Source: Podarcis erhardii (taxonomy: Eukaryota). From it: a DNA stretch of 64,000 nucleotides. Below the pieces are notes generated by a model that was not told where the DNA came from, searched no databases, and worked only from the letters and a program-made list of their open reading frames with translations. A program made the position numbers and the translations under genes. The stretch is from NCBI GenBank assembly GCA_964252035.1, contig OZ176206.1. One strand, written 5' to 3'. This document shows, piece by piece, positions 25,301 to 55,000 of the stretch (position 1 is its first letter; every line of letters starts with the position of its first letter).

Positions 25301-26295
25301 AAAAGGCTTTCTGCTGCCGGACATCAGCCCTAAAGATGTGAGGGCAAGGAAGAATTGCATGACCTTGAAAGTAGGTCTAAATGCTAGACCTTCCAGCTCA
25401 TCTCTGGCATTGTGCATATTGGGGGGGAAAAGGAAAATACAGCAAGTCATGAAAAAGATCATATACTTACAGGAGATCTCTTGCTTCGAAGTCCCTTCAG
25501 ATAAAAAAAGCAAAGCAAAGTGACAAGTTAATGGAATGACAAACAGATGACCACTGTGGTTGTTTTTTTCAGACCACAAAGATATGTAATTCATGAGGTG
25601 CGCCCCCCATTTAAAACTGTGTTTCTTTGCAGTAAAATGGAAGGCGTGGGCATAATTATGGCATTGATTCCTAAATTATGTTTAATAGTAGACAGAGACA
25701 ATAATAATGTAGCATTTTTGCAGAGGCCCAACTGCAGCAGAACAGAAACTGCACTAATTGTGATGAAGACAGGATAAAATGAAAAATTATCCCTTCGTAC
25801 ATCCCCAGTTCACACCAGGGACTTCTTAATTCACAGCTCAGTCCACTGGCTAAAATGCTGCACTGCATTGTAGTGTGTATTCCTTGTGGGGGTTTACAAT
25901 GAAAAGTGGGATATTGCCAGGTCATTTCTGAGAATGAGCCAGGCCAAAATGGTTGCTTAACTGTGGAACAGCTTTATTGTAAAAAAGGAAAAGTCCAGAA
26001 GAAAAGTCACAAAAAGTTGGCTGGATGCCCTGGCAGAGACTGTAAGAGTGGTGTGATTTCACCATTTGCATGAATCCCTGTACAAAGAGCAAAACAACAA
26101 TATATGAATCACTGTTTGGGCACTGCTGTCTCCACATGGACATTTCTGATATTGTAGTAGGATTCTCTTATAATAGTCCTCAGGTACTGCTGAAGGAAGC
26201 ACATTCTGTCATCTACTTGAAGAGAAAGATCATTGTGGAAGAAAGGTGTTGCATGGCTCCTTTCAAAGCAGAAGTCACCTTACCGCAGTGCTTTC
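7674..26295 (-). CDS. Gene B: paralogous micro-exon gene (possibly a pseudogene because of its decayed 5' end)
   Basis: Phase-0 exons: 26284-26295 ESTA; 25471-25494 GLRSKRSP; 24002-24019 IIPAKF; 22918-22962 VLYSVHLNGGSLPLL (less sure); 21254-21280 AGAVPAVIP; 20533-20550 DPATLT; 19638-19655 DVAIST; 16181-16192 ERIA; 15955-15987 AGGIARFQTTV; 14269-14298 ATGSGCGLVN; 12999-13016 LYSDQE (weak acceptor); 12481-12507 IIGVGAPPR; 10718-10750 GRGLPTSPPFP; 9669-9692 GLRKKRSP; stop exon 7668-7676. Confidence 0.65.
9669..9692 (-). CDS. Gene B micro-exon GLRKKRSP (RKKR convertase site)
   Basis: cacctgaag|GGACTTCGAAAAAAGAGATCTCCT|gtaagt. Confidence 0.75.
10283..10320. repeat. (AAAG)n microsatellite
   Basis: Direct reading. 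Confidence 0.9.
11914..12425 (+). mobile_element. BovB/RTE LINE 3' fragment
   Basis: RTE RT C-terminal sequence, (caa)n tail; 16-bp TSD agtctaatgtaaataa at 11898-11913 and 12426-12441. Confidence 0.9.
15025..15337. mobile_element. hAT-family MITE
   Basis: TIR cagggccgtctta/taagacagccctg; 8-bp TSD cacccact. Confidence 0.85.
18777..19018. mobile_element. Tc1/mariner MITE
   Basis: TIR cagtggtacctcg; TA TSD. Confidence 0.9.
19904..20144. mobile_element. Tc1/mariner MITE (second family)
   Basis: TIR cagtcaaac/gtttggctg; TA TSD. Confidence 0.8.
22451..22468 (-). pseudogene. Gene B pseudo-exon GIIAAA (acceptor lost)
   Basis: gacatttcg|GGT... versus gacatttcag in sister units; donor gtgagt intact. 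Confidence 0.6.
23215..23456. mobile_element. Tc1/mariner MITE (same family as 18777, opposite orientation)
   Basis: TIR cagtggtacctc; TA TSD. Confidence 0.9.
23627..23770. mobile_element. hAT-family MITE
   Basis: TIR cagtgctttttt; perfect 8-bp TSD ctctgtac. Confidence 0.85.
25471..25494 (-). CDS. Gene B micro-exon GLRSKRSP (RSKR convertase site)
   Basis: atctgaag|GGACTTCGAAGCAAGAGATCTCCT|gtaagt. Confidence 0.75.
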
Positions 26296-32265: not shown

Positions 32266-35200
32266 CTGCTCAGGTAGATTGTTGTTGAAAAAGAAGCAAA
32301 AGACACAAGTTATTTCTCTGTTTCCTTAGGGCACTAAGTAAGTCACTACAGGTCACTAAATGACTAGCAAACAGGCATTTAATTGAAAGGAAGGAGAGGA
32401 TACCCAGAACAAAGATTTACTTATCACTGAGAAATATATATTTTGTTCATAGAAGACCGACTGAAATTAATGGACATGACTAACTTAGGTAATTAATTTC
32501 AATCGGTCTCCTCTGAATAAATAGACCAAGGAAGGCAACCATTTCAGCACAGAGGGAAGCTTTTGTAGGCTCATAGCTACTGTAAAATGTTTCTTACGAT
32601 TATTTATTTTTAATATATTTGTTATATACTGCCCTTAATCAAGTTGAAAATACAAGATAAAAATGCAAATAACGAGTCACCAATCTGCACATTTGTCTGT
32701 TTTCCATTCTAGGCTTGTGGTAGAAAACTCAGCCATGTAAGATATCAGAAGGCTAAATGGATTCTTGAATACCACTCCTTTCCCCAACCGCGCCTCCCTT
32801 GCCCCCAGGGGGTAAGATTTGCATTTCATGCTCAGTGCCATTTTTCCTGCCTTCCAGCCCTGTTTGGGGGGTGGGAAACGAGGCACTATTCTGAGGGGGA
32901 AGCATTTTGGGTCCCCACATGAAATGCAGCACTAGGGGGGTGGGAATGGGGTTAACAACTTTATGCAGGCGCTCAACCTGCTGCTTCTCTCCATTTCCAC
33001 TTGGAGAACCATAGTACTGCTATTACTCAGACCGCACTAATGTCACTAGGACCACAAGCAAAGATTACACACAAATGCAACAGAAGCTACTGGGTATCAT
33101 CTAGTTAAATAATATTAATAATAGTAATAATGCCCCTTTCATTGTAAACCAAAATATTGCTCATTTAAAAGTATCAGCAATACTCACAACTACACCAGTA
33201 ACACCCTGAAATATAGAAGTGTGTATATAGTTAGTCTTTCCTCAGCAGCTCAAGCATTCATCACTGAGGTGTATAAGGGAGAGGACCTCAACATCCAATA
33301 GGCAGCATTGTCCCGTATTTCCATGTGCTGCATTGCATGTCAAGGCCCTGAGCCTTCCCCCATTTGTTGAATAATAAAACACATGGACACCAGTATTTTA
33401 GGTTAATGGGCTAATAAAGGCCACAACTTAATTGGTCACAGAATGTGAGTGGTATTGGCTTAGGCACTGGAATTGAACCGACTATATCTGACTCCTGCCC
33501 GCCATGCAGCTAGTCCAGTAAGGGTCAACCACCAGTAGGGGGAGCCCTGTGGATGTTCTGAGGCAGGAACCAAGATGGAGAACAACCAGGCCGTGCGGCT
33601 GCATAAATGCTATAAGCCACGCCCTCGGCCGACTGGATTGGTCAGTGGGGGTGTGACGCGGCTGGGACTCCCCCATGATGTGGGGGCACTGCCACACCCC
33701 CGCTGAACACGGTGGGAAGAAGAAGAAGAGTTTGGATTTGATATCCCGCTTTATCACTACCCTAAGGAGTCTCAAAGCGGCTCACAATCTCCTTTCCCTT
33801 CCTCCCCCACAACAAACACTCTGTGAGGTGAGTGGGGCTGAGAGACTTCAGAGAAGTGTGACTGGCCCAAGGTCACCCAGCAGCTGCTTGTGGAGGAGCG
33901 GAGACGCGAACCCGGTTCCCCAGATTACAAGTCCATCGCTCTTAACCACACTGGCTCTCTCCCCACACAGGGAAGGGAGTGGCCTACTAAGATCCCAAGA
34001 GACACCTGAAACTCTGCGGGAAACTGTGAGTAACCTTGTTGCTTAAGTACCAAACTCTTCAAGATAGTATTTCTGGAAATGTGGACCAAATCTAATATAT
34101 ACCATGATCTAACACTACTATGAAGAAAAGAGATAATTCAGCTGCAAAGGGTTCCTTCTATAGTAGGCTGCTTAGAACAGAAGAATCGATTATTTGTCAT
34201 ATTCTTTTTTGGCTAGGATCATATTCTGAGGCAGAAAAGAACTTCCACCTTGCCTCCCTACTACCTTCCCACTACGGACTATATAAAAAATACAGAAAAG
34301 TTCCAGAATACTCACGCTCAGTAAGTTGTTCAAATCAAGACCCTAAATTGAAAAACAAATTGAACTTATTATGCTTTCAGGTGCCCTACATTACGGATGA
34401 CTGCCTATGAAAATAGATAACTATCACCAGACAGTCTTCAATTAAAATGTGTTCTCTTAGAGGGGATGCCTGGTCCAAGTCCAGTTCAACAATATGGAAT
34501 CAAGTCCAGGTTCATATTACATGCTGCTTGTTTGTTTCATATGCTTCCTTTCCTTCACGGATTCTTCCTTTTATTACAGCTGTTAGCAATACTAAGGGAC
34601 CTTTTCCAGGAAGGATATGTGAGATATGAACATTTTAATACAACTCAAATTACATGGGCTTCAAGAGACAGAGCACTAGGAGAATTCAGATACTCCAATT
34701 ATTCATGTGGCATTCACACCCCAATGTTCCCAAAAGCTTTACACCAACAGGAAACCCAAGACTTGTCATATGAAGTGACAATATACAGTACAGTAGATCT
34801 GCAATTGACATGGGCGTCATGTTTCGGGGGTTTACGTACAAAGGCAAAACCATGCAAAGTGAGGAAGGCCCCATGGAACCATTCGCTCAAGGCCTGCTAC
34901 TACCTTGCCAGACTCTGGGAAGGTTGTGCGAGGTCTCTGGAAGGCTGTGGGAGGCTCCTGAGAGATATGAAGGGATGTCAATCCAAGTCCAGTTACATAT
35001 TACACTATCTTGGAGACACCTACAATAAGACATCCCAGCTTTTATTTCCTTCATGTCAGCAATGAATGTAGGGAAGCAGCAAATGATAATCAAATGCTCT
35101 TCACAAATGCCTACCTTTAAAAAAGGGCAATCATATTAACTCTGTCTGTTCTTCCCTGGCTTGGATCATATTTTGAAAAAGAGAAGAACTAAATGGAAAT

Positions 35201-38200
35201 AACAAGTTGAACTTCCTATGTTTTTGTGCTAAATTTTATAATTCTCTCCTTGGGTATCAAAAGTTGGCTGCCTGTAACAAATGGCAAACATTATAGCCCA
35301 ATGAGTTCTTCCCTTGCTGGGATCATCCTCTGACCACCTCCTTCCTTCCCTTCCTGCTTTCCATTTTCACACTACATACAATATAATAATCATTCAAAGG
35401 TTTCACAATACTCACGCTCAATAGACCTTGCAAACCCTACAGTGAAAAACAAATAAAACTTGTTAGGCTTTCATGTTGTTTGCGCCCCTTATAATCTGCA
35501 ACACTTGACAGAGCACAGTTGTTTATTCTGAAGAACCATCAGTACACAGTCCACTATGTAAAAGTGTCCTTTGAGAGAATATGTGGCCAAAGTCCAGTTT
35601 AAGGATACAGGGCACAGCAGATTATATCTAAAATATAATCGTTCAAAATTCCTGCCTTTGGAAAGGCAATGCATTTTAGCTGTGTGAATTCTTCCCTGGC
35701 TGAGGTTATATTGTGACAGAGAGTAACTTTTCCTTTCTTCCTCATCTCCACTTTCCCACTAAAAAGAAAACAAAAAAATCTCAATACTCACTGCCAAGGC
35801 TCCATTCGCATCAGCACGCTAAATTGAAAAGCAGATTGAACTGATTAGCAAATGGTATGGGAGATCCAGTCACAGATATGACACGTAACACATAGTTGGG
35901 TCAATACATATCAAGTACTAACAAGAATTCTTTCAAAGCGTTAATTCTATCAGGCAACAGCAAGCTATAACTCAGCATTGGAACACATTTTTAAAAGAAA
36001 AGCCTGACTAGCTTTTCAGATATCTTTTAAATAAAAAACTTTTTAAAGAAATTCCTGAAGTAAGTGCTATTATAGTTTGAGGTCTTGTTTATTCTGTTAT
36101 ATTTTACTCCAAGAAGGCCCATTTATCCTAAATAGAACCCCATAAGGTGGAGATGTATGTAATGTGATCCCATTGAGATCCCAAGATGAAAGTTTGCAAG
36201 CAGCTCTTAGAAATATTAAATAAATACATTTTTGGAAATTTATATATATATATTATAATAATTTTTTATTACTTTTTAAAATTGAAACTCTAAAGTAAGT
36301 ACATCATATAACATATAATATTAAAAACCATGGCGTTCTGAAGAGATTGGTGTTTTTAGTTTTGATATATCTGAATTCTGGGTTGAGCTTTTAAGGTGTT
36401 TGTGTAGTCTGGCAAGGCCAAAAAATAATAGTGGAGTTGGAGCATACAAGGGAAATCTGAAAATATTTTCATGATATTGCTTGGAAGTTCAGCTATTCTG
36501 GTGCCAGCCAACTCCTGCTTGCAGAGGTTTCCTAAAAAGCCTCTCTTAAAAGCCCAGATTCTTCTTTTCAAGATAAAACTATTTTCTGAACAAAAGAGAA
36601 ATCAGCTGCCCAAAACAAAGATATATAGACGGAGCCTAGGCTGCAGGGATTTAGAAAGGCAATTTTAGACCCTGGATGGGCCTAGAATTGCATTTTGCAG
36701 GGGGAGGTTCAAACAAAACAGACCATATAGGTAGTACACAAAGACTTCAAAATACTCACTTCCAGTGTCGAATGCACCTCAGGATCCTAAATTGAAAAGC
36801 AAATGGAATTACTTGGGCTTTTATGTACTCTTAACACTATGTCAGATGCCCACCTATACAGAGGGAAATCATCTACTTCGAAGGGTTGTCAGCTATTTAA
36901 AAGTGCTCTCTATATGAAGGGTGATTAATCAAAGTCCAGATACATATGAAACACTGCTTGGGGAGATCTACAATGAGACACCCCAGCTTTCATTTCCTTA
37001 ATGGTAGCAATGAATGTAGGGGGGCAGCAAATGCTTTGACAAATGCCTAGCTTTAAGAAAGGGCAATCATATTAGCTCTGTTTGTTCTTCCCTGACTCGG
37101 ATTCTATTTTTTGGGGGGGGGCTACTCTTTTCTTCCCCGCCTTCATCCCACTTTCCCATTATGGACTACGTAGACAAAACAATGGTTCACAATTCAAACA
37201 TTCACTTTCTCAACAGCACCCTAAATGAAAATAAATGGAAAGTTCTCACTACAAACCATAGAACAACCATAGAAATGTTTCACAATACTCACTTTCAACA
37301 ATTGATCTACAACCTACAGAGAAAAGCAAATTGAACATATTAGGCTTTCATGTTCTTTGCACGACATATATTTTGCAATACTTGACACAGGACAATTGTT
37401 TATTCTGAAGAACCATCAGCACACAGTCCACTGTGTAAAAGTGTCCTCTGTTTGAGAGAATGTTTAGCCAAAAGTCCAGGATTTTAGCTCATTTCCTTCC
37501 CTGAATCATTCCATACATTCTGGAAAAGAGGGGTGGCAAATAATATTAGTTGCCAGCCAAATGGCAAATATTATCGTCTAATGAGTTCTTCCATGGTTTG
37601 GGGCATCCACTGAGTCACAGAAGAGTTCCTCCTTCCTTCTCTCTATTCCTCCCATTTTAATGCAACAAACCGTATCGTAAACACACTAAGCTTTCGCAAT
37701 ACTCACTTGCAGTTTTTCTGGCAGACGAAGGCTCTAAATAGAAAAGCAAATTGAATTTATTAGATATTAGTGTCTGGCCAAAGTTCAGTATACAGAAATG
37801 TAAAAAATGAGACGTGCAGGGGGCAGCAGATTATATCTGAATGCCTAAAAGAATTCATTGCTTTAGGAAAGGGCAAGCATTTTAGCTCTGTGAATTCTTC
37901 CCAGCATGAGGTTATATATTGTAACAGAGAATAACTTTTCCTCTCCCCACCCCGAACTCCCTTCCACTTTCCCACTACAAATCATATAGGAAACCCGCTC
38001 AAGAATCACAATACATTCATGGATGCATTCACATCAAGACCCTAAACTCAAAAGCAAATCGAACTGATTAGCAAATGGTGGGAGATCCAGTCCCAGGTTT
38101 GCCACCTAACACATAGTTTCATCCTCAAGCAAGAATTTTACCGTTTCATGTGGCAAAGAACAAAATATAAAGGCAAACAAACGAAAACTGATTCAGTCTC

Positions 38201-41200
38201 ATGTGTTGCACAGCTGCCTTCATTTTAGCCAATCTCCTTTCGTGAATAATTCCGTATCTTCCCAAAAGGAGGGTCCCTCTCTAACAGTCAGGCTGATATA
38301 TTTGGTGTGGAATTCAGTCTCCTATTCATTAAGGTTAGAAGAGTAGACTGTCCAACTTGAAAAGACAAAGTAATAGTGGAGATGGGGCATACATGGGAAA
38401 TGTGGAAATAATTTTATGAACTTGCTTGAAAGTTCTGCTATACTAGTTGCCAGCCTGCTCCTGCTTGCAAACATTTCCTAAAAGCCTTTATATTAAAAAA
38501 ACAAAAACCCAAGATTCTTATTTCCAGTAGAACAATTTTCTGAATAGAAGATGATGCAAGGAGATCCACTGCCTAAGACAAAGATATAGAGACTGAGCCC
38601 AGGCTGTGAGAGTGTAGAACTAAGGCAATTTTAGACCCTGGATGGGTTTGGCAAATAATATTAGTTGCCAGCCAAATGGCAAACATTATCACCTAATGAG
38701 TTCTTCCATGCCTTGGATCATCAGAAGAGTTCCTTTCTTCCCTTTCTTTCTCCCATTTTATTACTACAAACCATATAGCAATCACACAAAGGTTTCACAA
38801 TACTCACTTGCAACGTCTTTTGCAAATCAAGGTTCTAAATAGAAAAGGAAATTGAATTTATTAGACATTCATGTCTGGCCAAGGTCCAGGATTTAAGGAA
38901 ACAGAAGTGTAAAAAAGGAGACCTGCAAGGGGCAGCAGATTATATCTGAATGTTTAAAATTTAATTCCTGGCTTTGGAGATGGCAAGCATTTTAGCTCTG
39001 TGAATTTTCCCCTGGCTGAAATTATATATTGTGACAGAGAATAACTTTTCCTTTCCTCCTTTCCCCCATCTCCTTTCCACTTTCCTGCTATAAATCATAT
39101 AGGAAACCCACTCAAGAATCACAATACATTCATGGCTGCATTCACATCAAGACCCTAAACTGAAAAGCAAATCGAACTGATTAGCAAATGGTATGGTGGG
39201 AGATCCAGTCCCAGGTTTGCCACCTAACACAGAGTTTCATCCTCAAGCAGGAATTCTACCATTTCTTGTGGCAGAGATCAGAATATAAAGGCAAACCAAT
39301 GGAAGCTGATTCAGTCTCACGTGTTGTGCAGTTGCCTTCATTTTTGCCAATTTCCTTTCTTGAATTCTTCCATACCTTCTCGAAAGGAGGCTCCCTCTCT
39401 AACAGCCAGGCTGATATATTTGGTATGGAGTTCACTCTCCTACTCATTAAAGTTAGAAGAGCAGATAAAGGAGAGCAGACTGTCCAACTTGCAAATTCAA
39501 AGTAACAGTGGAAATATTTGTATGACCTTTCTTGGAAATTCCGCCTTCCTTCCCTCCTTTCCTCTCATAATACTACTACAGACCATATAGTAATCACACA
39601 AAGGTTTCACAATACTCATGTTCAACGTTTCTCCCAAACCAATTTTCTAAATAAAAAAGCAAATTGAATTTATTAGACAAGTTAATTGGACAGCTTATAA
39701 TTTGTGCTATTTTACAGAGGACATTTGGCTTTTCTGAGGAGCCATGAGTACACAGAACTCTATGTAAAGGTATCCTGGCCAAAGTCCTGTTTAAGGATAC
39801 AGAAATTGGAGAAGGGAGGCTTGCAGGGGCCTCCTGTTTTGTTTCTCTTTCTAGTTCTTGCCCATATTGAGGATCATATCATAGCATGAAAGGATGCTAT
39901 ATGAATATTTGATATTTCAAAGCCTACAGTGGAAAATGGCATGGTGGGAGATATAGACACTGAAATGGCACATAGCACATAGTTTCATTCTCAGGCAGGG
40001 ATTCCCTCTTTTCCTGAAGGAAAGATCAGAATAAATAAGCAAACGGATCTAAAGACAGTCTCACATGTCTTCATTTTAGCCAATCTCCTTTCCTGGGTAA
40101 TTCCATACCCTCCTGAAAGGAAGGTCCCTCTCAAGTAACCAGGCTGATAGATTTGGTGTGGACTTCACTCTCCTTTTCCATTAAGGTTAGAAAAGCAGAT
40201 GAAGGAGAGTTGAGTGTCCAACGGGCAAAGACAAAGTATTAGTGGAGATGGGGCATAACATGGAAAATTTGAAAGTGCTTTCATGAAACTGCCTGGAGGT
40301 TCAGCTATACTAGTTACCAGCTAGGTCCTGCTTACAGACCTTTCCTTTAAAAAACACCTTTATTAAAAACCCACAATGCTTATTTCCAGTACAACAATTT
40401 TCTGAAGAGAAGAGGATGCCTTTGCCCTAGGCGATCAGCTGCCCCCAAAAGGATATGAAATTAGAGCCCAGGATGTGGGGGTTCAATAAAACAATTTAAA
40501 TTCCTGGGTGGACCTAAAATTTAATTTATTAGCTAGTCCTTACTCAACAGCTAAATCATTCATCACTGAAGTGCCTGAAATAGGAGACTTCAGCATTCAA
40601 AAGGCAGAATTTTACCATATTTTCATAAACTGCGTAATAAGATCCAAAGAGATACCAGAACCTCTAACAAAAATGTGATCAAGCTTGTTGCTTTTGCACC
40701 AAACTTTTCAATATATTCTTTCTGGAAATATAGACTGAATCTAACACACACAAGGATCGAACAGTACTATGAAGAGAAGAGAGAACTCAACCAAACAAAG
40801 GTTCCTTCTGTAGCAAACTGATTAGAACTGGAGAACAGATTGTCATATACTTGCCAGGCTGGGATCATACTTTGAGGCAGAAAAGTACTCGCTCCCTCCC
40901 TCCCTCCCAGTTTCCCACTCCAGAGCATACAATAAATAAACAAAAGTTCCACAATACTCACATCCACTAAACCAGACACACCAAGACTCTAAATTGAACA
41001 ACAAAATGAACTGATTAGCAAATGGCATCGTGGGAGAACAGATTGTTCGTCATTTTCTTCGCTGGCAGTGATATCATATTTTGAGGCAGAAAAGCCCTCC
41101 CTCCCAGTTTCCCACTCCAGATCATACAATAAGTACAAAAAGTGCCATAATACTCATGTCCACTACATCAGACAAACCAAGATTCTAAATTGAACAACAA

Positions 41201-44200
41201 ATTGAAATGATTAGCAAACTGCATGATGGGAGCTCCAGCCACAAGTATATCACGTAACACAGTTTTATCTTCAGGCAGGGATTCTCCCACTTCATGGGGG
41301 AAAATGAGAATTTACAGGCAAACTAGGGTTAGAAGAGCGGATAAAGAAGAGCAGACCGTCCAACGTGCAAAGACAAAGTAATAGTGGAAAATGTGTAAAA
41401 CAACAACAACAAAAAGTAACTTATGTAAAATTTGAAAATATTTTCATGGAATTGCTTGGACATTCTGCTAGACTGGTTGCCAGCCAGTAGGATAAGATAA
41501 GTTATTGATGAGGCTAAAATTCCTTGGTTTGGAATTCAAACTTCCTTGAGTAATAATGACTGGCTTTCACAAATGGAAAACATTATAGCGTAGTGAATTT
41601 CCCCCCCAGTGGGATCATCCTATGAGCAACAGAAGACCTTCTCCCTCCCACTACAAATCTTAGGGTATGAAGATTTCTCAATACTCACGCTAGTTGCTCC
41701 ACCCAGAAGCTAAATTGAAAAGGAAATTCAACTTGTTAGTCTGCCATGTTCTCTTAACTGCTTAACATGTGGAAATGTCATGTAACACATATTTAGGTCC
41801 TAAGGCAAGGATTCCCCTATTCATCAAGGAAACATCAGAAGAGAAAGCAGAAGCGATCTGAACTGATTCAGTCTCATGTGCATCACAACTGCCTCCATAT
41901 TAGTCATTTTTCTTTACAGAGCAATTCCATAACAAAGGAGAGGAATCCAACCAAATTGCAAAGAGAAGGAAATAGTGGAGGTGGGGCATAATGCGGAAAA
42001 TCTGAAAACTCTTTTTAGAAAAATCATTGGGTAAACTATTTGCCAGCCAGATCCTGCTCCCATATGTTTCCTAAGAAACCTTCTGGATTTCAAATTATTG
42101 TAAATAATCTGTAATGTAACGCACTTTTTGTATGTTACTTTAACTAATAAACGCATATTTTTACCCTGCCCCATGCATTTTTGTACACACTGCTTGCCTG
42201 GAGAGCACCACTGCAACATTCAGTGAATGTTGAATTCAGAAGCGCTGATATGTTCCAGTTAGTACAGCATTTTGTTTCAGAAAGTGAGAAGTAGGCAAGT
42301 GGGGTTTAAAATGATAGCTGAATCTAATTTCTCCCTCATCTCTACATCAGACTGGATTTTTTCTTCCCCTTGGCTTTCTTCATCATTTCCTGAAGTTCCC
42401 CTCCCCAATATTTGGGGCTAATAGATTCAGTGAAATGTCTATCATCATTTGCCAAAAGGCTTAGGACAGAAGGTAAAGGAGAGGATATCAGACAGACCAA
42501 CCCACAGGGACAAAAATACAGCAGAGGGACATAACATCAAAAAGGTCTCTTTTAGGAAATAACTAGATGTTTTCCAGCCTACATCAAAGATATATTTTTT
42601 TTAATTGTGATTTCAGTTGCAGTATAAAAATTTCCCAAAGAGAAGGACAGGACCCCCCGCCCCACAAAAAACACCTCCCCAAAGAACAGTATAATGAAGG
42701 AGCCCAGAATAAATTCTACCCATGCCTGGGCTATTTGATTTAGTTTCAGATTCCCAGAAGACATGAACCAGAATCAATCAGGATACGACCACATGACTAA
42801 ATGTTAAAAAATAAATAATTCTTTTTTTAAATTGAAAAGTCACAATAAATACTGGATACTTACTGGAGATCTCTTCTTCCTCTGTTGTTGTTTTACAAAG
42901 GGAAACAATAGTGTTTTTTTAGTTTTTTGCTTTTTTGCTTTTCATATATTTTATCATCAAATATATTAAAAGAAAATACAGAAAAGATCAAATTGTTATT
43001 TATTTCTGTTATTTATTTATTTATGTTATTACCCCATTTCTGAGTATATTACAGGAGAAACACATTATACTTGTTTCTGTTCACATCTCTGTATTAGAAG
43101 TGACTCTCAACATACATGAGGGTTATGTTCCAGGGACAACGCATAAAGCCAAAATTTTGTATAATCAAAATACATTCTCCCTGCACCTCCAAACACTCTC
43201 CTAAGGTAGGGTTAACAAAGTTTCTCCCCTCAAACGTCCGCCCCCTTATTTATTTATGTTTAGCCAAGTGAGTAAAGCTGAACGTGCATAAGTTACGTTG
43301 TGAGTTACCAGTATGAGAAAGAAACTTGTGTTGCTATTGATGTGCACTTTGACCCCCGTGTACATTAACATGCAACTGAAGTCCTCAATTCCCACTAGAA
43401 ATCCAGATTTCTCCCTCTCCTGGCTGTTCTGCAAGCTGCAGTTTCTGGAGGCAGCACTACCTGCTCACATTATGCTGAAAACTGTCTCATTGCTATCCGT
43501 AATATATGCATGGTTATCAATCTATCAAAAATATGTATCAAATAGCATATTTTTTTACTTTTACCAATAGGCAGCATTTCCTCATATTTCCATATGCTAC
43601 ATATTAAGATCCAAAGAGACACCTGAAACTCTGAGGGAAACTGAGTAACTCTGTTGCTTTAGTACCAAACTCGTCAAGATCTAATACACACCATGAATCC
43701 AACACTACTACAGAAAGAAGAGATAATTTAGCTGCAAAGGCTTCCTTCTATAGTAGGCTGCTTAGAACAGAAGAATCGATTGCTTGTCATATTCTTCTCT
43801 GGCTGGGATCTCATATTCTGAGCGAGAGAAGAACTTCCTCCTTGCCTCCCTCCCACCTTCCCAATATAGACTATACAATAAATACACAAAAGTTCCACAA
43901 TACTCACGCCTAGTACTTTGGACAAATCAAGACCCTAAATTGAAAAACAAATTGAACTTATTAGGCTTTCAGGTACCCTACATTACAGATGAGTCTTTGA
44001 AAGTAGATAACTGAAAACAGTCAGTCTTCAATAAAAATGTGTTCTCTTTTGAGGGGATGCCTGGTCCAAGTCCAGATCTTTCCCAAAAATCCTTGTGTAT
44101 TTTCCCTTCCAGGACAATAGTATTTTGACACAAATTAAAAGAGGATGCCATGGAAATCAGTTTCCCAAAGCAAAAGGAAAGGAACAGAATCCAATCTGTG

Positions 44201-45973
44201 GTCACACAGTAAGACAATTTGAGACCCTGGACTGACTGGCCTTATGGGGGCACTGGGTCAGGAAGACATCTGAATCTCAGGAGGAAACTCACTTTGATCT
44301 TCAGAAAAGGCCTGGCTCTGGTTTGCATCACTAACTGTGTTATTGGTGGTGAGTGTGAAAGGAAGGGCCTTTTGGGTGGTTATGCCCACATTTCAGGAAG
44401 AGATAAGTTACTATGTCTTCCACGTTTCTCATTGCTGCTGTAGTTTTGGGGTTTTGTTTCATATGTTTCCTTTGCTTCACAGATTCTTGCTTTTAATATG
44501 GCTGTTAGCAATACTAAGGGACCTTTTCCAGGAAGGATATGTGAGATATGAACATTTTAATACAACTCAAATTACGTGGGCTTCAAGAGACAGAGCACTA
44601 GGAGAATTCAGATACTCCAATTATTCATGTGGCATTCACACCCCAATGTTCCCAAAAGCTTTACACCAACTGGAAACCCAAGACTTGTCATATGAAGTGA
44701 CAATATACAGTACAGTAGATCTGCATGCCCCATGGGCGTCATGTTTCGGGGGTTTACGTACAAAGGCAAAACCATGCAAAGTGAGGAGAAATATGAAGGG
44801 ATGTCAATCCAAGTCCAGTTACATATTACACTATCTTAGAGACACCTACAATAAGACATCCCAGCTTTTATTTACTTCATGTCAGCAATGAATGTAGGGA
44901 AGCAGCAAATGATAATCAAATGCTCTTCACAAATGCCTACCTTTTAAAAAGGGCAATCATATTAACTCTCTCTGTTCTTCCCTGGCTTGGATCATATTTT
45001 GAAAAAGAGAAGAACTAAATGGAAATAACAAGTTGAACTTCCTATGTTTTTGTGCTAAATTTTATAATTCTCTGCTTGGGTATCAAAAGTTGGCTGCCTG
45101 TAACAAATGGCAAACATTATAGCCCAATGAGTTCTTCCCTTGCTGGGATCATCCTCTGACCACCTCCTTCCTTCCCTTCCTGCTTTCCATTTTCACACTA
45201 CATACAATATAATAATCATTCAAAGGTTTCACAATACTCACGCTCAATAGACCTTGCAAACCCTACAGTGAAAAACAAATAAAACTTGTTAGGCTTTCAT
45301 GTTGTTTGCGCCCCTTATAATCTGCAACACTTGACAGAGCACAGTTGTTTATTCTGAAGAACCATCAGTACACAGTCCACTATGTAAAAGTGTCCTTTGA
45401 GAGAATATGTGGCCAAAGTCCAGTTTAAGGATACAGGGCACAGCAGATTATATCTAAAATATAATCGTTCAAAATTCCTGCCTTTGGAAAGGCAAGGCAT
45501 TTTAGCTCTGTGAATTCTTCCCTGGCTGAGGTTATATTGTGGCAGAGAGTAACTTTTCCTTTCTTCCTCATGTCCACTTTCCCACTAAAAAGAAAACAAA
45601 AAAATCTCAATACTCACTGCCAAGGCTCCATTCGCATCAGCACGCTAAATTGAAAAGCAGATTGAACTGATTAGCAAATGGTATGGGAGATCCGGTCACA
45701 GATATGACACGTAACACATAGTTGGGTCAATACATATCAAGTACTAACAAGAATTCTTTCAAAGCGTTAATTCTATCAGGCAACAGCAAGCTATAACTCA
45801 GCATTGGAACACATTTTTAAAAGAAAAGCCTGACTAGCTTTTCAGATATCTTTTAAATAAAAAACTTTTTAAAGAAATTCCTGAAGTAAGTGCTATCTTT
45901 ATTCTGTTATATTTTACTCCAAGAAGGCCCATTTATCCTAAATAGAACCCCATAAGGTGGAGATGTATGTACA

Positions 45974-46012
<39 letters not shown>

Positions 46013-49000
46013 CCCATTGAGATCCCAAGAAGAAAGTTTGCAAGCAGCTCTTAGAAATATTAAATAAATACATTTTTGGACATTTATATATATATAATAT
46101 AATAATTTTTAATTACTTTTTAAAATTTTAGAATTTGTAAATTAAATTGAAACTCTAAAGTAAGTACATCATATAACATATAATATTAAAAACCATGGCG
46201 TTCTGAAGAGATTGGTGTTTTTAGTTTTTATCTGAATTCTGGGTTGAGCTTTTCAGGTGTTTGTGTAGTCTGGCAAGGCCAAAAAATAATAGTGGAGTTG
46301 GAGCATACAAGGAAAATCTGAAAATATTTTCATGATATTGTTTGGAAGTTCAGCTATTCTGTTGAGAGCCAACTCCTGCTTGCAGAGCTTTCCTAAAAAG
46401 CCTCTCTTAAAAGCCCAGATTCTTCTTTTCAAGATAAAACTATTTTCTGAACAAAAGAGAAATCAGCTGCCCAAAACAAAGATATATAGATGGAGCCTAG
46501 GCTGCAGGGATTTATAAAGGCAATTTTAGAACCTGGATGGGCCTAGAATTGCATTTTGCAGGGGGAGGTTCAAACAAAACAGACCATATAGGTAATACAC
46601 AAAGACTTCAAAATACTCACTTCCAGTGTCGAATGCACCTGAGGATCCTAAATTGAAAAGCAAATGGAATTACTTGGGCTTTTATGTACTCATAACACTA
46701 TGTCAGGTAACACCTATACATAGGAAAATCATCTACTTTGAAGGGTTGTCAGCTATTTAAAAGTGCTCTCTATATGAAGGGAGATTAATCAAAGTCCAGA
46801 TACATATGAAACACTGCTTGGGGAGATCTACAATGAGACGCCCCAGCTTTCATTTTCTTAATGGTAGCAATGAATGTAGGGGGGCAGCAAATGCTTTGAC
46901 AAATGCCTAGCTTTAAGAAAGGGCAATCATATTAGCTCTGTTTGTTCTTCCCTGACTTGGATTCTATTTGGGGGGGGGGACCTACTCTTTTCTTCCCCGC
47001 CTTCCTCCCACTTTCCCATTATGGACTACGTAGACAAAACAATGGTTCACAATTCAAACATTCACTTTCTCAACAGCACCCTAAATGGAAATAAATGGAA
47101 AGTTCTCACTACAAACCATAGAATAACCATAGAAAGCTTTCACAATACTCACATTCACCATTTGATTCAAAACCTACAGTGAAAAGCAAATTGAACATAT
47201 TAGGCTTTCATGTTCTTTGCACGACATATATTTTGCAATACTTGAGAGAGGACAATTGCTTATTCTGAAGAACCATCAGCACACAGTCCACTGTGTAAAA
47301 GTGTCCTCTGTTTGAGAGAATGTTTAGCCAAAAGTCCAGGAATTTAGCCCATTTCCTTCCTTGAATCATTCCATACCTTCTGGAAAAGAGGGGTGGCAAC
47401 TAATATTAGTTGCCAGCCAAATGGCAAACATTATCGCCTAATGAGTTCTTCCATGATTTGGGTCATCCACTGAGTCACAGAAGAGTTCCTCCTTCCTTCT
47501 CTCTCTTCCTCCCATTTTACTGCAACAAACTGTATCGTAAACACAATAAGCTTTCGCAATACTCACTTGCAGTTTCTCTGGCAGAGCAAGGCTCTAAATA
47601 GAAAAGCAAATTCAATTTATTAGATATTAGTGAGCCAACAGTAGATATTAGTGAGCCAACATGAGCCAACAGTGTGACACGGCAGCTAAAAAAGCCAATG
47701 CAATTCTGGGCTGCATCAATAGGAGTATAGCATCTAGATCAAGGGAAGTAATAGTGCCACTGTATTCTGCTCTGGTCAGACCTCACCTGGAGTACTGTGT
47801 CCAGTTCTGGGCACCACAGTTCAAGAAGGACACTGACAAACTGGAACGTGTCCAGAGGAGGGCAACCAAAATGGTCAAAGGCCTGGAAACGATGCCTTAT
47901 GAGGAACGGCTAAAGGAGCTGGGCATGTTTAGCCTGGAGAAGAGGAGGTTAAGGGGTGATATGATAGCCATGTTCAAATATATAAAAGGATGTCACATAG
48001 AGGAGGGAGAAAGGTTGTTTTCTGCTGCTCCAGAGAAGCGGACACTGAGCAATGGTTCCAAACTACAAGAAAAAAGATTCCACCTAAACATTAGGAAGAA
48101 CTTCCTGACAGTGAGAGCTGTTTGACAGTGGAATTTGCTGCCAAGGAGTGTGGTGGAGTCTCCTTTTTTGGAGGTCTTTAAGCAGAGGCTTGACGACCAT
48201 ATGTCAGGAGTACTCTGATGGCGTTTCCTGCTTGGCAGGGGGTTGGACTCGATGGCCCTTGTGGTCTCTTCCAACTCTATGATTCTATGATTCTATGATT
48301 CTAGTGTCTGGCCAAAGTTCAGTATTTAAGAATACAGAAATGTAAAAAATGAAACCTGCAGGGGGCAGCAGATTATATCTGAATGCCTAAAAGAATTCAT
48401 TGCTTTAGGAAAGGGCAGGCATTTTAGCTCTGTGAATTCTTCCCAGCATGAGGTTATATATTGTAACAGAGAATAACTATTCCTCTCCCCACCTCCCAAC
48501 TCCCTTCCACTTTCCCACTACAAATCATATATTAAACCCACTCAAGAATCACAATACATTCATGGCTGCATTCACATCAAGATCCTAAACTGAAAAGCAA
48601 ATCGAACTCATTAGCCAACGGAAACTGATTCAGTCTCATGTGTTGCACAGCTGCCTTCATTTTAGCCAATTTCCTTTTGTGAAATTTTCTTTATCTTCCC
48701 AAAAGGAGGGTCCCTCTCTAACAGTCAGGCTGATATATTTGGCGTGGAATTCAGTCTCCTATTCATTAAGGTTAGAAGAGCAGATAAAGAAGAGTAGACT
48801 GTCCAACTTGAAAAGACAAAGTCATAGTGGAGATGGGGCATACATGGAAAATGTGGAAATAATTTTATGAACTTGCTTCGAAGTTCTGCTATACTAGTTG
48901 CCAGCCTCCTCCTGCTTGCAGACATTTCCTAAAAGCCTTTATATTAAAAAAAACAAAAACCCAAGATTCTTATTTCCAGTAGAACAATTTTCTGAATAGA

Positions 49001-52000
49001 AGATGATGCAAGGAGATCCACTGCCTAAGACAAAGATATAGAGACTGAGCCCAGGCTGCGAGAGTGCAGAACTAAGGCAGTTTTAGACCCTGGATGGGTC
49101 TGGCAAACAATATTAGTTGCCAGCCAAATGGCAAGCCTTACAGCCTAACGAGTTCTTCCAAGAAGTGTGCATGCACACGAAAGCTCATACCTAGAACAAC
49201 TTAGTTGGTCTTTAAGGTGCTACTGGAAGGAATTTTTTTTATTTTGTTTTGACTATGGCAGACCAACACGGCTACCTATCTGTAACAAGTTCTTGCATGC
49301 CTTGGATCATCCTCTGAGTCACAGAAGAGTTCCTCCTTCCTTCCCTTTCTTTCTCCCATTTTACTACTACAAACCATATAGCAATCACACAAAGGTTTCA
49401 CAATACTCACTTGCAATGTCTTTTGCAAATCAAGGTTCTAAATAGAAAAGGAAATTGAATTTATTAGACATTCATGTCTGGCCAAGGTCCAGGATTTAAT
49501 GAAACAGAAGTGTAAAAAAGAGACCTACAAGGGGCAGCAGATTATATCTAAATGCCTAAAAAAATTAATTCCTGGCTTTGGAAATGGCAAGCATTTTAGC
49601 TCTGTGAATTCTTCCCTAGATGAAGTTATATATTGTGACAGAGAATAACTTTTCCTTTCCTCCCCATCTCCTTTCCACTTTCCTGCTATAAATCATATAG
49701 GAAATCCACTCAAGAATCACAACACATTCATGGCTGCATTCACATCAAGACCCTAAACTGAAAAGCAAATCGAACTGATTAGCAAATGGTATGGTGGGAG
49801 ATCCAGTCCCAGGTTTGCCACCTAACACAGAGTTTCATCCTCAAGCAGGAATTCTACCATTTCTTGTGGCAGAGATCAGAATATAAAGGCAAACCAACGG
49901 AAGCTGATTCAGTCTCACGTGTTGTGCAGTTGCCTTCATTTTTGCCAATTTCCTTTCTTGAATTCTTCCATACCTTCTCGAAAGGAGGCTCCCTCTCTAA
50001 CAGCCAGGCTGATATATTTGGTATGGAGTTCACTCTCCTACTCATTAAAGTTAGAAGAGCAGATAAAGGAGAGCAGACTGTCCAACTTGCAAAGTCAAAG
50101 TAACAGTGGAAATATTTGTATGACCTTTCTTGGAAATTCCGCCTTCCTTCCCTCCCTTCCTCTCATATTACTACTAGGGACCATACAGTAATCACACAAA
50201 GGTTTCACAATACTCACGTTCACCGTTTCTCCAAGTTTCTAAATAAAAAAGCAAATTGAATTTATTAGACAAGTTAATTGGACAGCTTATAATTTGTGCT
50301 ATTTTACAGAGGACATTTGGCTTTTCTGAGGAGCCACGAGTACACAGAACTCTATGTAAAGGTATCCTGGCCAAAGTCCTGTTTAAGGATACAGAAATTG
50401 GAGAAGGGAGGCTTGCAGGGGCCTCCTGTTTTGTTTCTCTTTCTAGTTCTTGCCCATATTGAGGATCATATCATAGCATGAAAGGATGCTATATGAATAT
50501 TTGATATTTCAAAGCCTACAGTGGAAAATGGCATGGTGGGAGATATAGACACTGAAATGGCGCATAGCACATAGTTTCATCCTCAGGCAGGGATTCCCTC
50601 TTTTCCTGAAGGAAAGATCAGAATAAATAAGCAAACGGATCTAAAGACAGTCTCACATGTCTTCATTTTAGCCAATCTCCTTTCCTGGGTAATTCCATAC
50701 CTTCCTGAAAGGAAGGTCCCTCTCAAGTAACCAGGCTGATAGATTTGGTGTGGACTTCACTCTCCTTTTCCATTAAGGCTAGAAAAGCAGATGAAGGAAA
50801 GTTGAGTGTCCAATGGGCAAAGACAAAGTATTAGTGGAGATGGGGCATAACATGGAAAATTTGAAAGTGCTTTCATGAAACTGCCTGGAGGTTCAGCTAT
50901 ACTAGTTACCAGCTAGGTCCTGCTTACAGACCTTTCCTTTAAAAAACACCTTTATTAAAAACCCACAATGCTTATTTCCAGTACAACAATTTTTGGAAGA
51001 GAAGAGGATGCCTTTGCCCTAGGCAGTCAGCTGCCCCCAAAAGGATATGAAATTAGAGCCCAGGATGTGGGGGTTCAATAAAGCAATTTAAATTCCTGGG
51101 TGGGCCTAAAATTAAATTTATTAGCTAGTCTTTACTCAACAGCTCAATCATTCATCACTGAAGTGCCTGAAATAGGAGACTTCAGCATTCAAAAGGCAGA
51201 ATTTTACCATATTTTCATAAACTGCCTAACAAGATCCAAAGAGATACCAGAACCTCTAAGAAAAATGTGATCAAGCTTGTTGCTTTTGCACCAAACTTTT
51301 CAATATATTCTTTCTGGAAATATAGACTGAATCTAACACACACAAGGATCGAACAGTACTATGAAGAGAAGAGAGAACTCAACCAAACAAAGGTTCCTTC
51401 TGTAGCAAACTGATTAGAACTGGAGAACAGATTGTCATATACTTGCCTGGCTGGGATCATACTTTTCTGGGAGGCAGAAAAGTACTCGCTCCCTCCCTCC
51501 CTCCCAGTTTCCCACTCCAGAGCATACAATAAATAAACAAAAGTTCCACAATACTCACATCCACTAAACCAGACACACCAAGACTCTAAATTGAACAACA
51601 AAATGAACTGATTAGCAAATGGCATCGTGGGAGAACAGATTGTTCGTCATTTTCTTCCCTGGGAGTGGTATCATATTTTGAGGCAGAAAAGCCCTCCCTC
51701 CCAGTTTCCCACTCCAGATCATACAATAAGTACAAAAAGTGCCATAATACTCATGTCCACTACATCAGACAAACCAAGATTCTAAATTGAACAACAAATT
51801 GAACTGATTAGCAAACTGCATGATGGGAGCTCCAGCCACAAGTATATAACGTAACACAGTTTTATCTTCAGGCAGGGATTCTCCCACTTCATGGGGGAAA
51901 ATGAGAATTTACAGGCAAACTAGGGTTAGAAGAGCAGATAAAGAAGAGCAGACCATCCAACGTGCAAAGACAAAGTAATGATGAGGCTAAGTTTTATAAT

Positions 52001-55000
52001 TCCTTGGTTTGGAATTCAAACTTCCTTGAGTAATAATGACTGGCTTTCACAAATGGAAAACATTATAGCGTAGTGAATTTCCCCCCCAGTGGGATCATCC
52101 TATGAGCAACAGAAGACCTTCTCCCTCCCACTACAAATCTTAGGGTATGAAGATTTCTCAATACTCACGCTAGTTGCTCCACCCAGAAGCTAAATTGAAA
52201 AGGAAATTCAACTTGTTAGTCTGTCATGTTCTCTTAACTGCTTAACATGTGGAAATGTCATGTAACACATATTTAGGTCCTAAGGCAAGGATTCCCCTAT
52301 TCATCAAGGAAACATAAGAAGAGAAAGCAGAAGCGATCTGAACTGATTCAGTCTCATGTGCATCACAGCTGGAAATAGTGGAGGTGGGGCATAAAGCAGA
52401 AAATCTGAAAACCATTTTTAGAAAAATCATTCGGGTTTTCATTTGGGTATACTATTTGCTAGCCAGATCCTGCTCCCATATGTTTCCTAAGAAACCTTCT
52501 GGATTTTCACTTCCACTACAACAATGTTCTGAACAGAAGGAAAAGTGGATGCCAAGAAGATCAGCTCCCCCAAGCAAATACAGAGAGAAAGAGTTCAGGC
52601 CCTGTACTGAGTGGTCTTATTTGGGGTGGAGCACACAGGAAGACACATGAATATCCATCACCAACTGTGGTGTGCTTGGTGAGCATGGGTGATAGGGTCT
52701 TCTTGGTGGCTGTGCTCAGGTTATGGAACTCAGCCATGGAAGAGTTCCATCTCTTGGGCATCAGCTAAACACAACAAAATTTAAGTGTACATTTCGCTAC
52801 TAGATAAGTGATATTTCTCCCATGTCTGTCATTGCTGGCAGTTTGCATGGGTGTTGCTTCGTATGCTTTCTTGGTTTCAATGACTACTCTCCTTACATTA
52901 CTTCTTAGCCATCCTGAGGCACCTATTTTAGGATGGATCCCAAGTGCTTCAGTTAGATGTGGTTCACAGTTGCCATCAGACAGGGGATGGCCAAATAGGT
53001 CCCTTCTGGTTTCTCTCAGATCCTCATTTTCCCAAAGGAGAGGATACCAGACAAACCAACTCACAGGGACAAAAGGATAGCAGAGGGACATAACGTTTGA
53101 AAAGTCTCATTCAGGAAATAACTAGAATTTTTTTCTAGCCTCCATTCAAAATATTGATTTTCATTTCCAGTATAAAAAAATCCCAAAGAGAAGGACAGGC
53201 TCCCAATGCCCCTTAATCCCCCCCCCCCAATAACAGTATAATGACTGAGCCCAGAATAAATTCTATTGATTCAGGGGCTTTTTGTGTTAGTTTCAGATTT
53301 CCAGAATCAATCAGGAAACTACAACACAACTAAATGTTAATAAATAAATAAATAAAAATTTCAATTGAAAAGTCACAATAAATACTGGATACTTACTGGA
53401 GATCTCTTCTTCCTCTGTTGTTAGTTTACAAAGGGAAACAATAGTGGTTTTTTTAGTTTTTTGCTTTTTTGTTTTTCATATATTTTGTCATCAAATATAT
53501 TCCAAGAAAATACAGAAAAGATCAAATTGTTATTTATTTCTATTCACATCCCGTTACTAAGTATATTACAGGAGAAACACATTATATTTGCTTCTGTTTC
53601 TGCTCAATCTCTATATCACAGTGGTACCTCTGGTTAAGAACTTAATTTGTTCTGGAGGTCCGTTCTTAACCTGAAACTGTTTTTAACCTGAAGCACCACT
53701 TTATCTAATGGGGCCTCCCGCTGCCGCTGCACAATTTCTGTTCTCATCCTGAAGCAAAGTTCTTAACCCGAGGTACGATTTCTGGGTTAGCGCAGTCTGT
53801 AAACTGAAGCGTCTGTAAACTGAAGCGTCTGTAACCCGAGGTACCACTGTACATTCAACTGTCAACATAACATGAGGGTAATGTTCTAGGGACAACTCAT
53901 AAAGCTAAAATCGTGTATAATCAAAACACATTCTCCCTGCACCTCCAAACACTCTCCCAAGGTGGGGTTGCCAAAGTCCCCCCCCCCCAAAAAAAACCCC
54001 TCCACTCCTTATTTATTTACTTTTTGCCAAGTGAGTAAAGCTGAATGGTGCCGCATTCCTAGATGGCAGAGGCTTCACTGGGGGAAGGAACTCAACCTTC
54101 AGAGCTTTTCCTGCTGGACCGTGGGGCCATAAGCCCCCATGGCCTATCAGGAACCAAATCCTAGCCTGCACCCTGCTTTGGCAACTGCAGTTCCTGGAGG
54201 TAGCAGTATCTGCTAACATTATACTGAAAAAGTCTCATTTTTATCCATAATACAGACAGTTATCAATCTATCAAAAATATGTATCAAATAGCATATCACT
54301 TCAATCATTTGTCTCTGAAACACCAAGATTAAGAGCAAGGAAGCGGTCCCTGTTTTTTGGGGGGGGGGGTTAGCTTTTCAAATCTCCCTAAAGTTAATGG
54401 ATGTCGAAGAAAAGTAATACAATACTTACAGAAAGTCCAGGCAGGCCCTAAAATAGAAAACAGTGTGTTTTGTGAAAACATCATTTGAGACAAAATAAGC
54501 AAATCTGGGCATGCTTCCCAACACTACTATACAGATCTCCAGATTTAAGGGAAACAAAGTTCCTGAGAGCACATATGAATAGTTGAGCACAGTTAAATCA
54601 CAACAGCCACTTCTGTGGGACACTGTTATGAACTAAGGGATACTTCTCGACTTCATGATCACAATTAATATACCACATTTTTTCGTCTATAAGACACCGC
54701 CTATCTTGGGGGCCTCAAAATTTAGAAAATAGGTGGAGACTGAGCTTTTGGGAAGGATTATTTGGGGGGGGGATGCCAAAAATTGTTCACCCAACAGAAT
54801 GCAGCACACAACCCCTTGCATTGCTTACAATCTCCGCTTACAATCTCGGGCTCGCGCCAAAAAACATTCGCCCGTCCCCCCTTGGCACTACCCATGTATA
54901 AGACAACCCTAAATTTTGAACCTCATTTTTGGGTCAAAAAAGTTTGTCTTATACATGGAAAAATATGGTATAACATGTTTGATTACTAAAAGCAGTTGCA

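What the first reader, a model, noticed from the sequence alone, without database searches (positions are those of the whole stretch)
38021..51781. Exons are switched off by CpG decay of the splice donor
Seen: all seven pseudo-exons in gene A keep their acceptor and reading frame but have GT>AT donors, and every one ends in C (GAC|at, AAC|at, GCC|at, TCC|at). The donor G was therefore part of a CpG. The pair 50218 (AAC|gtgagt, intact) and 39620 (AAC|atgagt) shows the change between duplicates. Established: methyl-CpG deamination gives CpG>CpA on one strand. Inference: with phase-0 exons this is a frame-neutral, mutation-biased way to delete peptide segments. Other C|GT donors that remain intact (LLGGATS, GLQGLLS, xGGLLx) may be under selection.
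Basis: partly seen in the sequence, partly recalled or inferred. Interest (0 to 1): 0.7.

Follow-up and report, generated by a model that had tools for sequence, protein, structure and literature searches.

The report
Broken splice donors in lizard mini-exon gene
A lizard gene built from dozens of tiny duplicated exons has seven copies that lack the normal splice signal, but these come from only about three mutation events. Only one or two of those events are clearly the common CpG-to-CpA change, so this is an ordinary, already understood way for such genes to lose segments.

Summary
The seven AT-donor units exist at the stated coordinates on the minus strand, each preceded by C. They sit in an unnamed lacertid-type gene of about 45 phase-0 mini-exons (15-33 nt).

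A 13-unit block of about 10 kb is tandemly duplicated, and it contains an older inner duplication. The seven units therefore collapse to three lineages.
- **39620 versus 50218:** a clean CpG>CpA donor loss.
- **41158/51755:** a probable CpG>CpA loss.
- **GCC/TCC|atgaat family (four copies):** this aligns better as a 27-nt exon whose donor lost 4 nt (GTGAGTATTG>GTATTG). Its core is the best-conserved part of its duplicated segment, so it may not be dead.

"All end in C" is not beyond chance (hypergeometric p 0.09-0.18). CpG sites at this locus do change about ten times faster than other sites (26.8% versus 2.7%), so the mechanism is plausible. The one donor lost among four C|GT pairs matches the neutral CpG rate.

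Casein genes already show donor mutations deleting short phase-0 exons without shifting the frame. This is a new instance of a known process, of low to moderate interest.

The parts
39620..39646 (-). Mini-exon unit KIGLGETLN with donor AAC|ATGAGTATTG. This is the one clean CpG>CpA donor loss.
   Evidence: A2. Its duplicate 50218 has AAC|GTGAGTATTG, all four other type-B paralogues have G at +1, and its acceptor and branch point are intact.
50218..50238 (-). Intact-donor duplicate of 39620 (KLGETVN, AAC|gt). It carries a 6-nt in-frame deletion relative to 39620 and the other paralogues.
   Evidence: A2.
41158..41184 (-). Unit NLGLSDVVD with donor GAC|ATGAGTATTA. Probable CpG>CpA loss that predates the block duplication.
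   Evidence: The sister unit 40962 (196 nt away) has GAT|GTGAGTATTG.
51755..51781 (-). Block-2 copy of 41158, identical in the exon. It represents the same mutation event.
   Evidence: 0 of 27 differences.
38015..38041 (-). GLDVNAS unit. It aligns better as a 27-nt exon (…TCC ATG AAT) followed by the truncated donor GTATTG.
   Evidence: (A1).
39128..39154 (-). GLDVNAA unit. Same family and same ancestral lesion as 38021.
   Evidence: It lies in the 84%-identity inner duplicate of 37534-38347.
48558..48584 (-). DLDVNAA unit, the block-2 copy of 38021.
49726..49752 (-). GLDVNAA unit, the block-2 copy of 39134. Its donor remnant is GTGTTG.
56905..56925 (-). NLPAEVL unit with donor CTT|ATAAGT.
   Evidence: A4. 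It is homologous to 54430, which has TCT|GTAAGT.
59985..60005 (-). Recent copy of 56905, in a duplicate that is 99% identical.
34087..43007 (-). Block 1 of the tandem duplication: 13 mini-exon units plus an RKKRSP mini-exon.
43675..53541 (-). Block 2 of the tandem duplication, 87-99% identical to block 1. It carries a block-specific CR1-like insertion at about 47640-48300.

Best explanation
The region is part of a minus-strand gene in a lacertid-type lizard. The gene is built from about 45 tandemly duplicated phase-0 mini-exons of 15-33 nt, each encoding a Leu/Gly-rich module of 5-11 residues. Each has a strong conserved branch point and acceptor and a near-invariant intronic donor, GTGAGTATTG. 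A 13-unit block of about 10 kb was recently duplicated in tandem.

Within this array, ordinary germline mutation now and then destroys a donor. Two lineages (39620, and 41158 with its copy 51755) carry a +1 G>A transition in a C|G context. This is the expected product of methyl-CpG deamination, and it occurs at about the neutral CpG rate for the locus. Lacking a usable donor, these units are most likely ignored by exon definition and skipped. Skipping removes 9 residues without shifting the frame. This step is inferred, not shown.

The four-copy GLDVNAA family is a different case. It is best read as a 27-nt exon whose donor lost 4 nt (GTGAGTATTG>GTATTG). Its core is unusually well conserved, so it may still be used weakly or may serve some other role.

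Nothing suggests a special mechanism or selection beyond CpG hypermutability acting on a gene where an unusually large share of donors follow C.
For: - **Architecture:** 25 matches to the donor motif against 0.6 expected; unit lists.
- **Duplication structure:**
- **CpG hypermutability:** CpG sites differ at 26.8% against 2.7% elsewhere, 27 of the 37 CpG differences are transitions, and CpG o/e is 0.20.
- **Clean CpG>CpA event:** 39620 against 50218 and four other paralogues.
- **GAC|at against sister GAT|gt:**
- **Alignment of the GLDVNAA family:** 27-nt exon plus a 4-nt donor deletion. Its 70-nt core shows 2-3 differences where about 11 are expected.
- **Rate check:** one of four C|GT block pairs has changed, against about 27% expected. 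None of six non-C pairs has changed, against about 5% expected each (from the rates).
- **The gene is under selection:** intact exons differ between blocks more than non-exon DNA does (17/225 against 216/7090, p=0.0008), with 11 non-synonymous and 3 synonymous codon changes.
- **Known parallel:** donor mutations cause frame-neutral loss of 24-33-nt exons in casein genes (PMC12470106).
Against: - No RNA evidence could be obtained, so both skipping and expression of the gene are inferred.
- No outgroup species could be examined. Ancestral states rest on paralogue comparison only.
- For 41158/51755 the ancestral -1 base could have been T.
- The two alignments of the GLDVNAA family differ only modestly in cost: one 4-nt gap with 9-11 mismatches, against two gaps with 7-10 mismatches.
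- The gene is unidentified.
Confidence: 0.55

Rival explanations
1. All seven units, in three lineages including the GCC/TCC|atgaat family, lost their donor through CpG>CpA. CpG decay would then be the dominant, mutation-biased route by which this gene deletes peptide segments.
For: - All seven units have C at -1.
- CpG sites mutate about 10 times faster than other sites here.
- From those rates, a C|GT donor is about 5 times more fragile than other donors.
Against: - MAFFT places ATGAAT opposite exon codons (GTG GAT / TTG GCA) with a single 4-nt gap in the donor.
- A non-CpG AT donor exists at 56905/59985.
- The enrichment for C gives p=0.09-0.18.
Confidence: 0.22
2. Some 'pseudo-exons' are not switched off. 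The GLDVNAA family would be a functional 27-nt exon (GLDVNAAMN) using the weak in-frame donor GTATTG, or a conserved decoy or regulatory pseudo-exon. Unit 39620 might use the in-frame GTGAAA donor 9 nt downstream.
For: - The 70-nt core, from branch point to GTATTGTGATTC, has 2-3 differences between duplicates that are otherwise 16% diverged (binomial p about 0.0005-0.003). It is the best-conserved stretch of the 840-nt segment.
- Acceptor, branch point and frame are intact in all four old copies.
- In-frame GT dinucleotides are present downstream.
Against: - GTATTG and GTGAAA both lack +5 G and have no -1 G. They pair with U1 over only about 4 positions, against 6 or more for GTGAGT (read directly from the sequence).
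- A local gene-conversion tract would also explain the conservation.
- Unit 41158 has no downstream in-frame GT nearby (attATGg).
Confidence: 0.2
3. The whole array is a decaying, untranscribed relic, and the AT units are just the first visible lesions.
For: - No RNA evidence was obtained.
- No first exon with a signal-peptide-like sequence was found in the window.
- The long ORFs give no Pfam hit.
Against: - The donor GTGAGTATTG and the branch point and acceptor are kept across about 30 units whose flanks are only 75-85% identical or not alignable at all.
- Exons evolve faster than the surrounding DNA, with an excess of non-synonymous changes. Neutral decay does not predict that.
Confidence: 0.06

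Closest known systems
Casein genes CSN1S1 and CSN1S2 (SCPP family): constitutive exon skipping caused by donor-site mutations
   Same: Their coding region is split into many 24-33-nt phase-0 exons made by intragenic duplication. Single-nucleotide or small-deletion lesions of the donor switch off one exon and delete 8-13 residues in frame (PMC12470106).
   Different: The lizard exons encode Leu/Gly-rich modules, not phosphoserine or acidic ones. No signal-peptide exon or SxE motif was seen, so membership of the SCPP family is untested. The casein cases are allelic variants confirmed at the mRNA and protein level, whereas here only genomic paralogues were compared. The review does not mention CpG context (0 occurrences).
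CpG hypermutability at splice donors in human disease genes (+1 G>A after an exon-final C)
   Same: The chemistry and the outcome match: deamination of 5-methylcytosine on the antisense strand turns C|GT into C|AT and abolishes the donor. This comparison rests on established knowledge, not on a test made here.
   Different: In typical vertebrate genes only a few percent of donors follow C, because -1 G is preferred. In this array 9 of 40 intact donors follow C and only 1 follows G, so exposure to this route is unusually high.
Schistosome micro-exon genes (MEGs)
   Same: These are secreted-protein genes made of many symmetric micro-exons (3-81 bp) separated by long introns. They evolve fast and vary by exon skipping (PMC10526429, PMC4350168).
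   Different: They belong to flatworms, not vertebrates, and no homology is implied. MEG variation comes from alternative splicing, not from fixed donor lesions.

Membership tests
Exon inactivation by donor-site mutation in an array of short symmetric exons (casein type) | Exons are short, a multiple of 3 nt and phase 0-0, so skipping keeps the frame. | tested here: met
   All units are 15-33 nt, divisible by 3, and open only in frame 0.
Exon inactivation by donor-site mutation in an array of short symmetric exons (casein type) | The lesion lies in the donor GT, with the acceptor and branch point intact. | tested here: met
   Units 39620, 41158 and 51755 have +1 A in an otherwise perfect xTGAGTATT donor. 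In the GLDVNAA family the donor is either mutated or truncated.
Exon inactivation by donor-site mutation in an array of short symmetric exons (casein type) | The exon is absent from mature mRNA. | not testable with these tools
Methyl-CpG deamination event (CpG>CpA) | A G>A change immediately 3' of a C that was already present in the ancestor. | tested here: met
   This holds for 39620: both duplicates share AAC, and 50218 and all paralogues have G at +1. It is inconclusive for 41158/51755, whose sister has T at -1, and for the GLDVNAA family, whose alignment is ambiguous.
Methyl-CpG deamination event (CpG>CpA) | The locus shows CpG depletion and a raised CpG transition rate. | tested here: met
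   CpG o/e is 0.20. Between the blocks 26.8% of CpG-involving sites differ, against 2.7% of other sites.
Methyl-CpG deamination event (CpG>CpA) | The site is methylated in the germline. | not testable with these tools
   No bisulfite data are available here. Methylation is inferred only from CpG depletion.
   Hypergeometric p is 0.09 for three lineages, 0.18 for two, and 0.12 for the whole array including the T|AT lineage.
SCPP / casein gene family | A signal-peptide exon followed by phase-0 exons carrying SxE phosphorylation motifs, at the SCPP locus. | tested here: inconclusive
   The phase-0 architecture is met. No signal-peptide-like first exon lies in the window, and no SxE motifs appear in the listed modules. 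Synteny is unknown.

The most novel reading that the evidence does not exclude
The array may be an undescribed, fast-evolving squamate micro-exon gene, a vertebrate counterpart of schistosome MEGs. Each super-repeat of about 10-17 kb carries one R(K/S)KRSP furin-type mini-exon, which suggests a polyprotein cut into Leu/Gly-rich peptides of about 90 residues. The oldest 'pseudo-exon' family would then be kept by selection, either as a weak-donor exon that is included only in some transcripts or as a decoy that tunes splicing of its neighbours. Donor CpG decay would be one of several routes that vary the peptide set.
Probability: 0.15. Interest if true: 0.55.

Novelty: new member of a known kind. 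Interest (0 to 1): 0.25.

Why it matters
If transcripts confirm the inference, the 39620/50218 pair is a tidy natural example. It shows a single CpG transition removing a 9-residue module from a modular secreted-type protein shortly after a segmental duplication. It would also show that a gene whose donors rarely have -1 G and often have -1 C is especially exposed to this route.

That illustrates known principles rather than revealing a new one. The more interesting open question is the gene itself. It is a large lizard micro-exon array, its exons evolve faster than its introns, and it could not be identified here.

Tried and rejected
- **Gene identity:** every exon is 5-11 residues, too short for any protein tool taken exon by exon.
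- **Pfam:** a scan of ten long ORFs of the window gave nothing.
- **First exon:** a scan for an ATG-initiated, hydrophobic, phase-0 exon with a strong donor found none.
- **Earlier scan notes:** look-ups by place and by words found nothing on this locus.
- **Literature:** searches found no paper on a lizard mini-exon gene or on evolutionary exon loss through donor CpG decay.
- **U12-type AT-AC introns:** rejected. The donors read ATGAGT or ATGAAT, not ATATCC, and the next acceptors are AG.
- **A-to-I editing of the AU donor to IU:** considered, but nothing supports it. The units are direct repeats, not inverted ones.
- **Relaxed constraint on the pseudo-exons:** the block-to-block comparison is uninformative (2/69 differences).
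Full report
**What is there.**
The window is vertebrate DNA: GC is about 40% and CpG o/e in the region is 0.20. Earlier notes of this scan call the genome wall-lizard-like or lacertid. I did not test that myself, although a CR1-type LINE tail typical of squamates lies at about 47640-48300.

On the minus strand the motif AATACTCAYR, the reverse complement of a donor GTGAGTATT, occurs 25 times against 0.6 expected. Exon-like units were extracted and searched with an nhmmer profile built from 18 of them. Together these show about 45 mini-exons of 15-33 nt. All are multiples of three and open only in frame 0. Each is preceded by a CTAAT/CTAAC branch-point-like motif, a T-rich tract and TTTAG, and is followed by GTGAGTATTG.

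The encoded modules are Leu/Gly-rich, for example [32 protein letters not shown] and NGGLLG. Only 1 of 40 intact donors has G at -1, and 9 have C.

**Duplication structure.**
Self-BLAST shows that 34.1-43.0 kb and 43.7-53.5 kb are tandem duplicates at 87-99% identity, each with 13 units in the same order. Inside each block, the segment 37534-38347 duplicates 38649-39465 at 84%. Further recent duplicates lie at 54.6-60.9 kb (96-99%).

**The observation.**
The duplication structure reduces them to three lineages:
- the GCC/TCC|atgaat family (38021, 39134, 48564, 49732);
- GAC|atgagt (41158, 51755);
- AAC|atgagt (39620).

An open frame over 7-9 codons is expected about two times in three, so it adds little.

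**Lineage by lineage.**
1. *39620.* In alignment A2, 39620 and its block-2 duplicate 50218 share AAC at the exon end. 50218 and the four other type-B units have G at +1, and 39620 has A. This is a clean CpG>CpA change that postdates the block duplication. Unit 39620 keeps the ancestral 27-nt length, while the intact copy 50218 has a 6-nt in-frame deletion.
2. *41158/51755.* These read GAC|ATGAGTATTA. The sister units 196 nt away (40962/51559) read GAT|GTGAGTATTG. An ancestral GAC|GT would give both states by one CpG transition each. An ancestral GAT|GT needs two ordinary transitions. Given the roughly 15-fold CpG transition bias measured here, the CpG route is the more likely one, but it is not proven.
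3. *The four-copy family.* MAFFT (A1) aligns …GCC ATG AAT with the last codons of the 27-nt paralogues (…GTG GAT, …TTG GCA) and places one 4-nt gap in the donor (GTGAGTATTG>GTATTG). I favour the deletion reading at about 60:40. Under it, this family is not a G>A event and still has an in-frame but weak GT donor.

Units 56905 and 59985 read CTT|ATAAGT and are homologous to 54430, which reads TCT|GTAAGT (A4). This is an AT donor in a non-CpG context.

**Is it more than chance?**
The tests count lineages. Three of three dead lineages ending in C, among 12 block lineages of which 6 end in C, gives p=0.09. Two of two gives p=0.18. Three of four across 19 lineages of the whole array gives p=0.12. 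None is significant.

**Is the mechanism plausible here?**
Yes. Between the blocks, 37 of 138 CpG-involving sites differ (26.8%), and 27 of those differences are transitions. Among other sites 198 of 7246 differ (2.7%). From these rates a C|GT donor is roughly five times more likely to lose GT than another donor.

Of four C|GT donor pairs shared by the blocks, one has changed, where about 1.2 would be expected. Of six non-C pairs none has changed, where about 0.3 would be expected. Donor loss therefore runs at about the neutral rate. There is no sign that the remaining C|GT donors are protected, nor of any excess loss, though the numbers are tiny.

**Are the units really off?**

From the sequence, +1 A abolishes U1 pairing. 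The nearest in-frame alternatives lack +5 G and -1 G: GTGAAA lies 9 nt after 39620, and GTATTG lies 6 nt after GCC in the four-copy family. Unit 41158 has no such alternative nearby. Skipping by failure of exon definition is the likely outcome.

The GLDVNAA core, 70 nt from the branch point to GTATTGTGATTC, shows only 2-3 differences between duplicates that are 16% diverged overall (binomial p 0.0005-0.003). It is the best-conserved stretch of the segment. The neighbouring intact exon core has 13-14 differences in 75 nt. The low divergence of the core points to constraint or to gene conversion, and it argues against treating this family as long-dead.

**Is the gene real?**
Splice signals are retained across units whose flanks are 75-85% identical or not alignable. 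Intact exons differ between blocks more than non-exon DNA does (17/225 against 216/7090, Fisher p=0.0008), with 11 non-synonymous and 3 synonymous codon changes. That pattern fits a functional, fast-evolving coding sequence, not neutral decay.

No signal-peptide-like first exon is in the window, so the 5' end probably lies beyond 64000.

The gene could not be named. Every exon is too short for exon-by-exon searches. The joined model was not searched, folded or scanned. Pfam on ten long ORFs gave nothing.

**Comparison with what is known.**
The closest parallel is the casein genes CSN1S1 and CSN1S2. Donor-site lesions there cause constitutive, frame-neutral skipping of 24-33-nt exons that arose by intragenic duplication (PMC12470106). 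That review does not discuss CpG context.

CpG hypermutability producing +1 G>A donor mutations is established in human genetics; this rests on my own knowledge. In architecture the gene resembles schistosome micro-exon genes (PMC10526429, PMC4350168), with no homology implied.

The finding is therefore a new instance of known processes.

**Verdict.**
There is one clean and one probable CpG-decay donor loss. There is no rule, and the enrichment is not significant. Skipping remains untested. Interest is low to moderate. The unidentified micro-exon gene is the more interesting object.

Noticed in passing
window 9669-9692, 25471-25494, 42866-42883, 53397-53414 (minus strand): Four homologous mini-exons encode (GL)R(K/S)KRSP, each followed by GTAAGTAT. 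There is one per super-repeat of about 10-17 kb (A3). The RxKR motif is a furin-type site, so the product might be a polyprotein. The two copies inside the 10-kb blocks have poor acceptor contexts.
   Followed up: partly
window 34316-52189, intact mini-exons of the two blocks: Exons differ between the duplicated blocks 2.6 times more often than the surrounding DNA (p=0.0008), with 11 non-synonymous and 3 synonymous codon changes. The changes are concentrated in 34316/43908 and 37293/47153. This suggests diversifying selection.
   Followed up: partly
window 38000-38090, 39110-39200, 48540-48630, 49710-49800: The core of the supposedly oldest pseudo-exon family is the most conserved stretch of its duplicated segment: 2-3 differences in 70 nt against 16% overall. 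Constraint and gene conversion could not be told apart.
   Followed up: partly
They follow T, not C.
   Followed up: yes
window, about 47640-48300: A CR1-like LINE 3' fragment with a (gattctat)n tail is inserted in block 2 only, so it postdates the block duplication. The ORF 47661-48125 on the plus strand gave no Pfam hit.
   Followed up: partly
whole array, window 10718-63597: Only 1 of 40 intact donors has G at -1, where vertebrate donors usually do. The donors appear to rely entirely on the intronic GTGAGTATTG.
   Followed up: no
window 22451-22468: A unit of the 18-nt exon family (GIIAAA) reads …catttcg|G where its paralogues read …catttcag|G. It may be a pseudo-exon inactivated at the acceptor rather than at the donor.
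   Followed up: no
window 34466-35065 and 44337-44891 (plus strand): Long duplicated ORFs of 199 and 184 residues lie on the strand opposite the gene, inside an intron. They have no Pfam match and their origin is unknown.
   Followed up: partly
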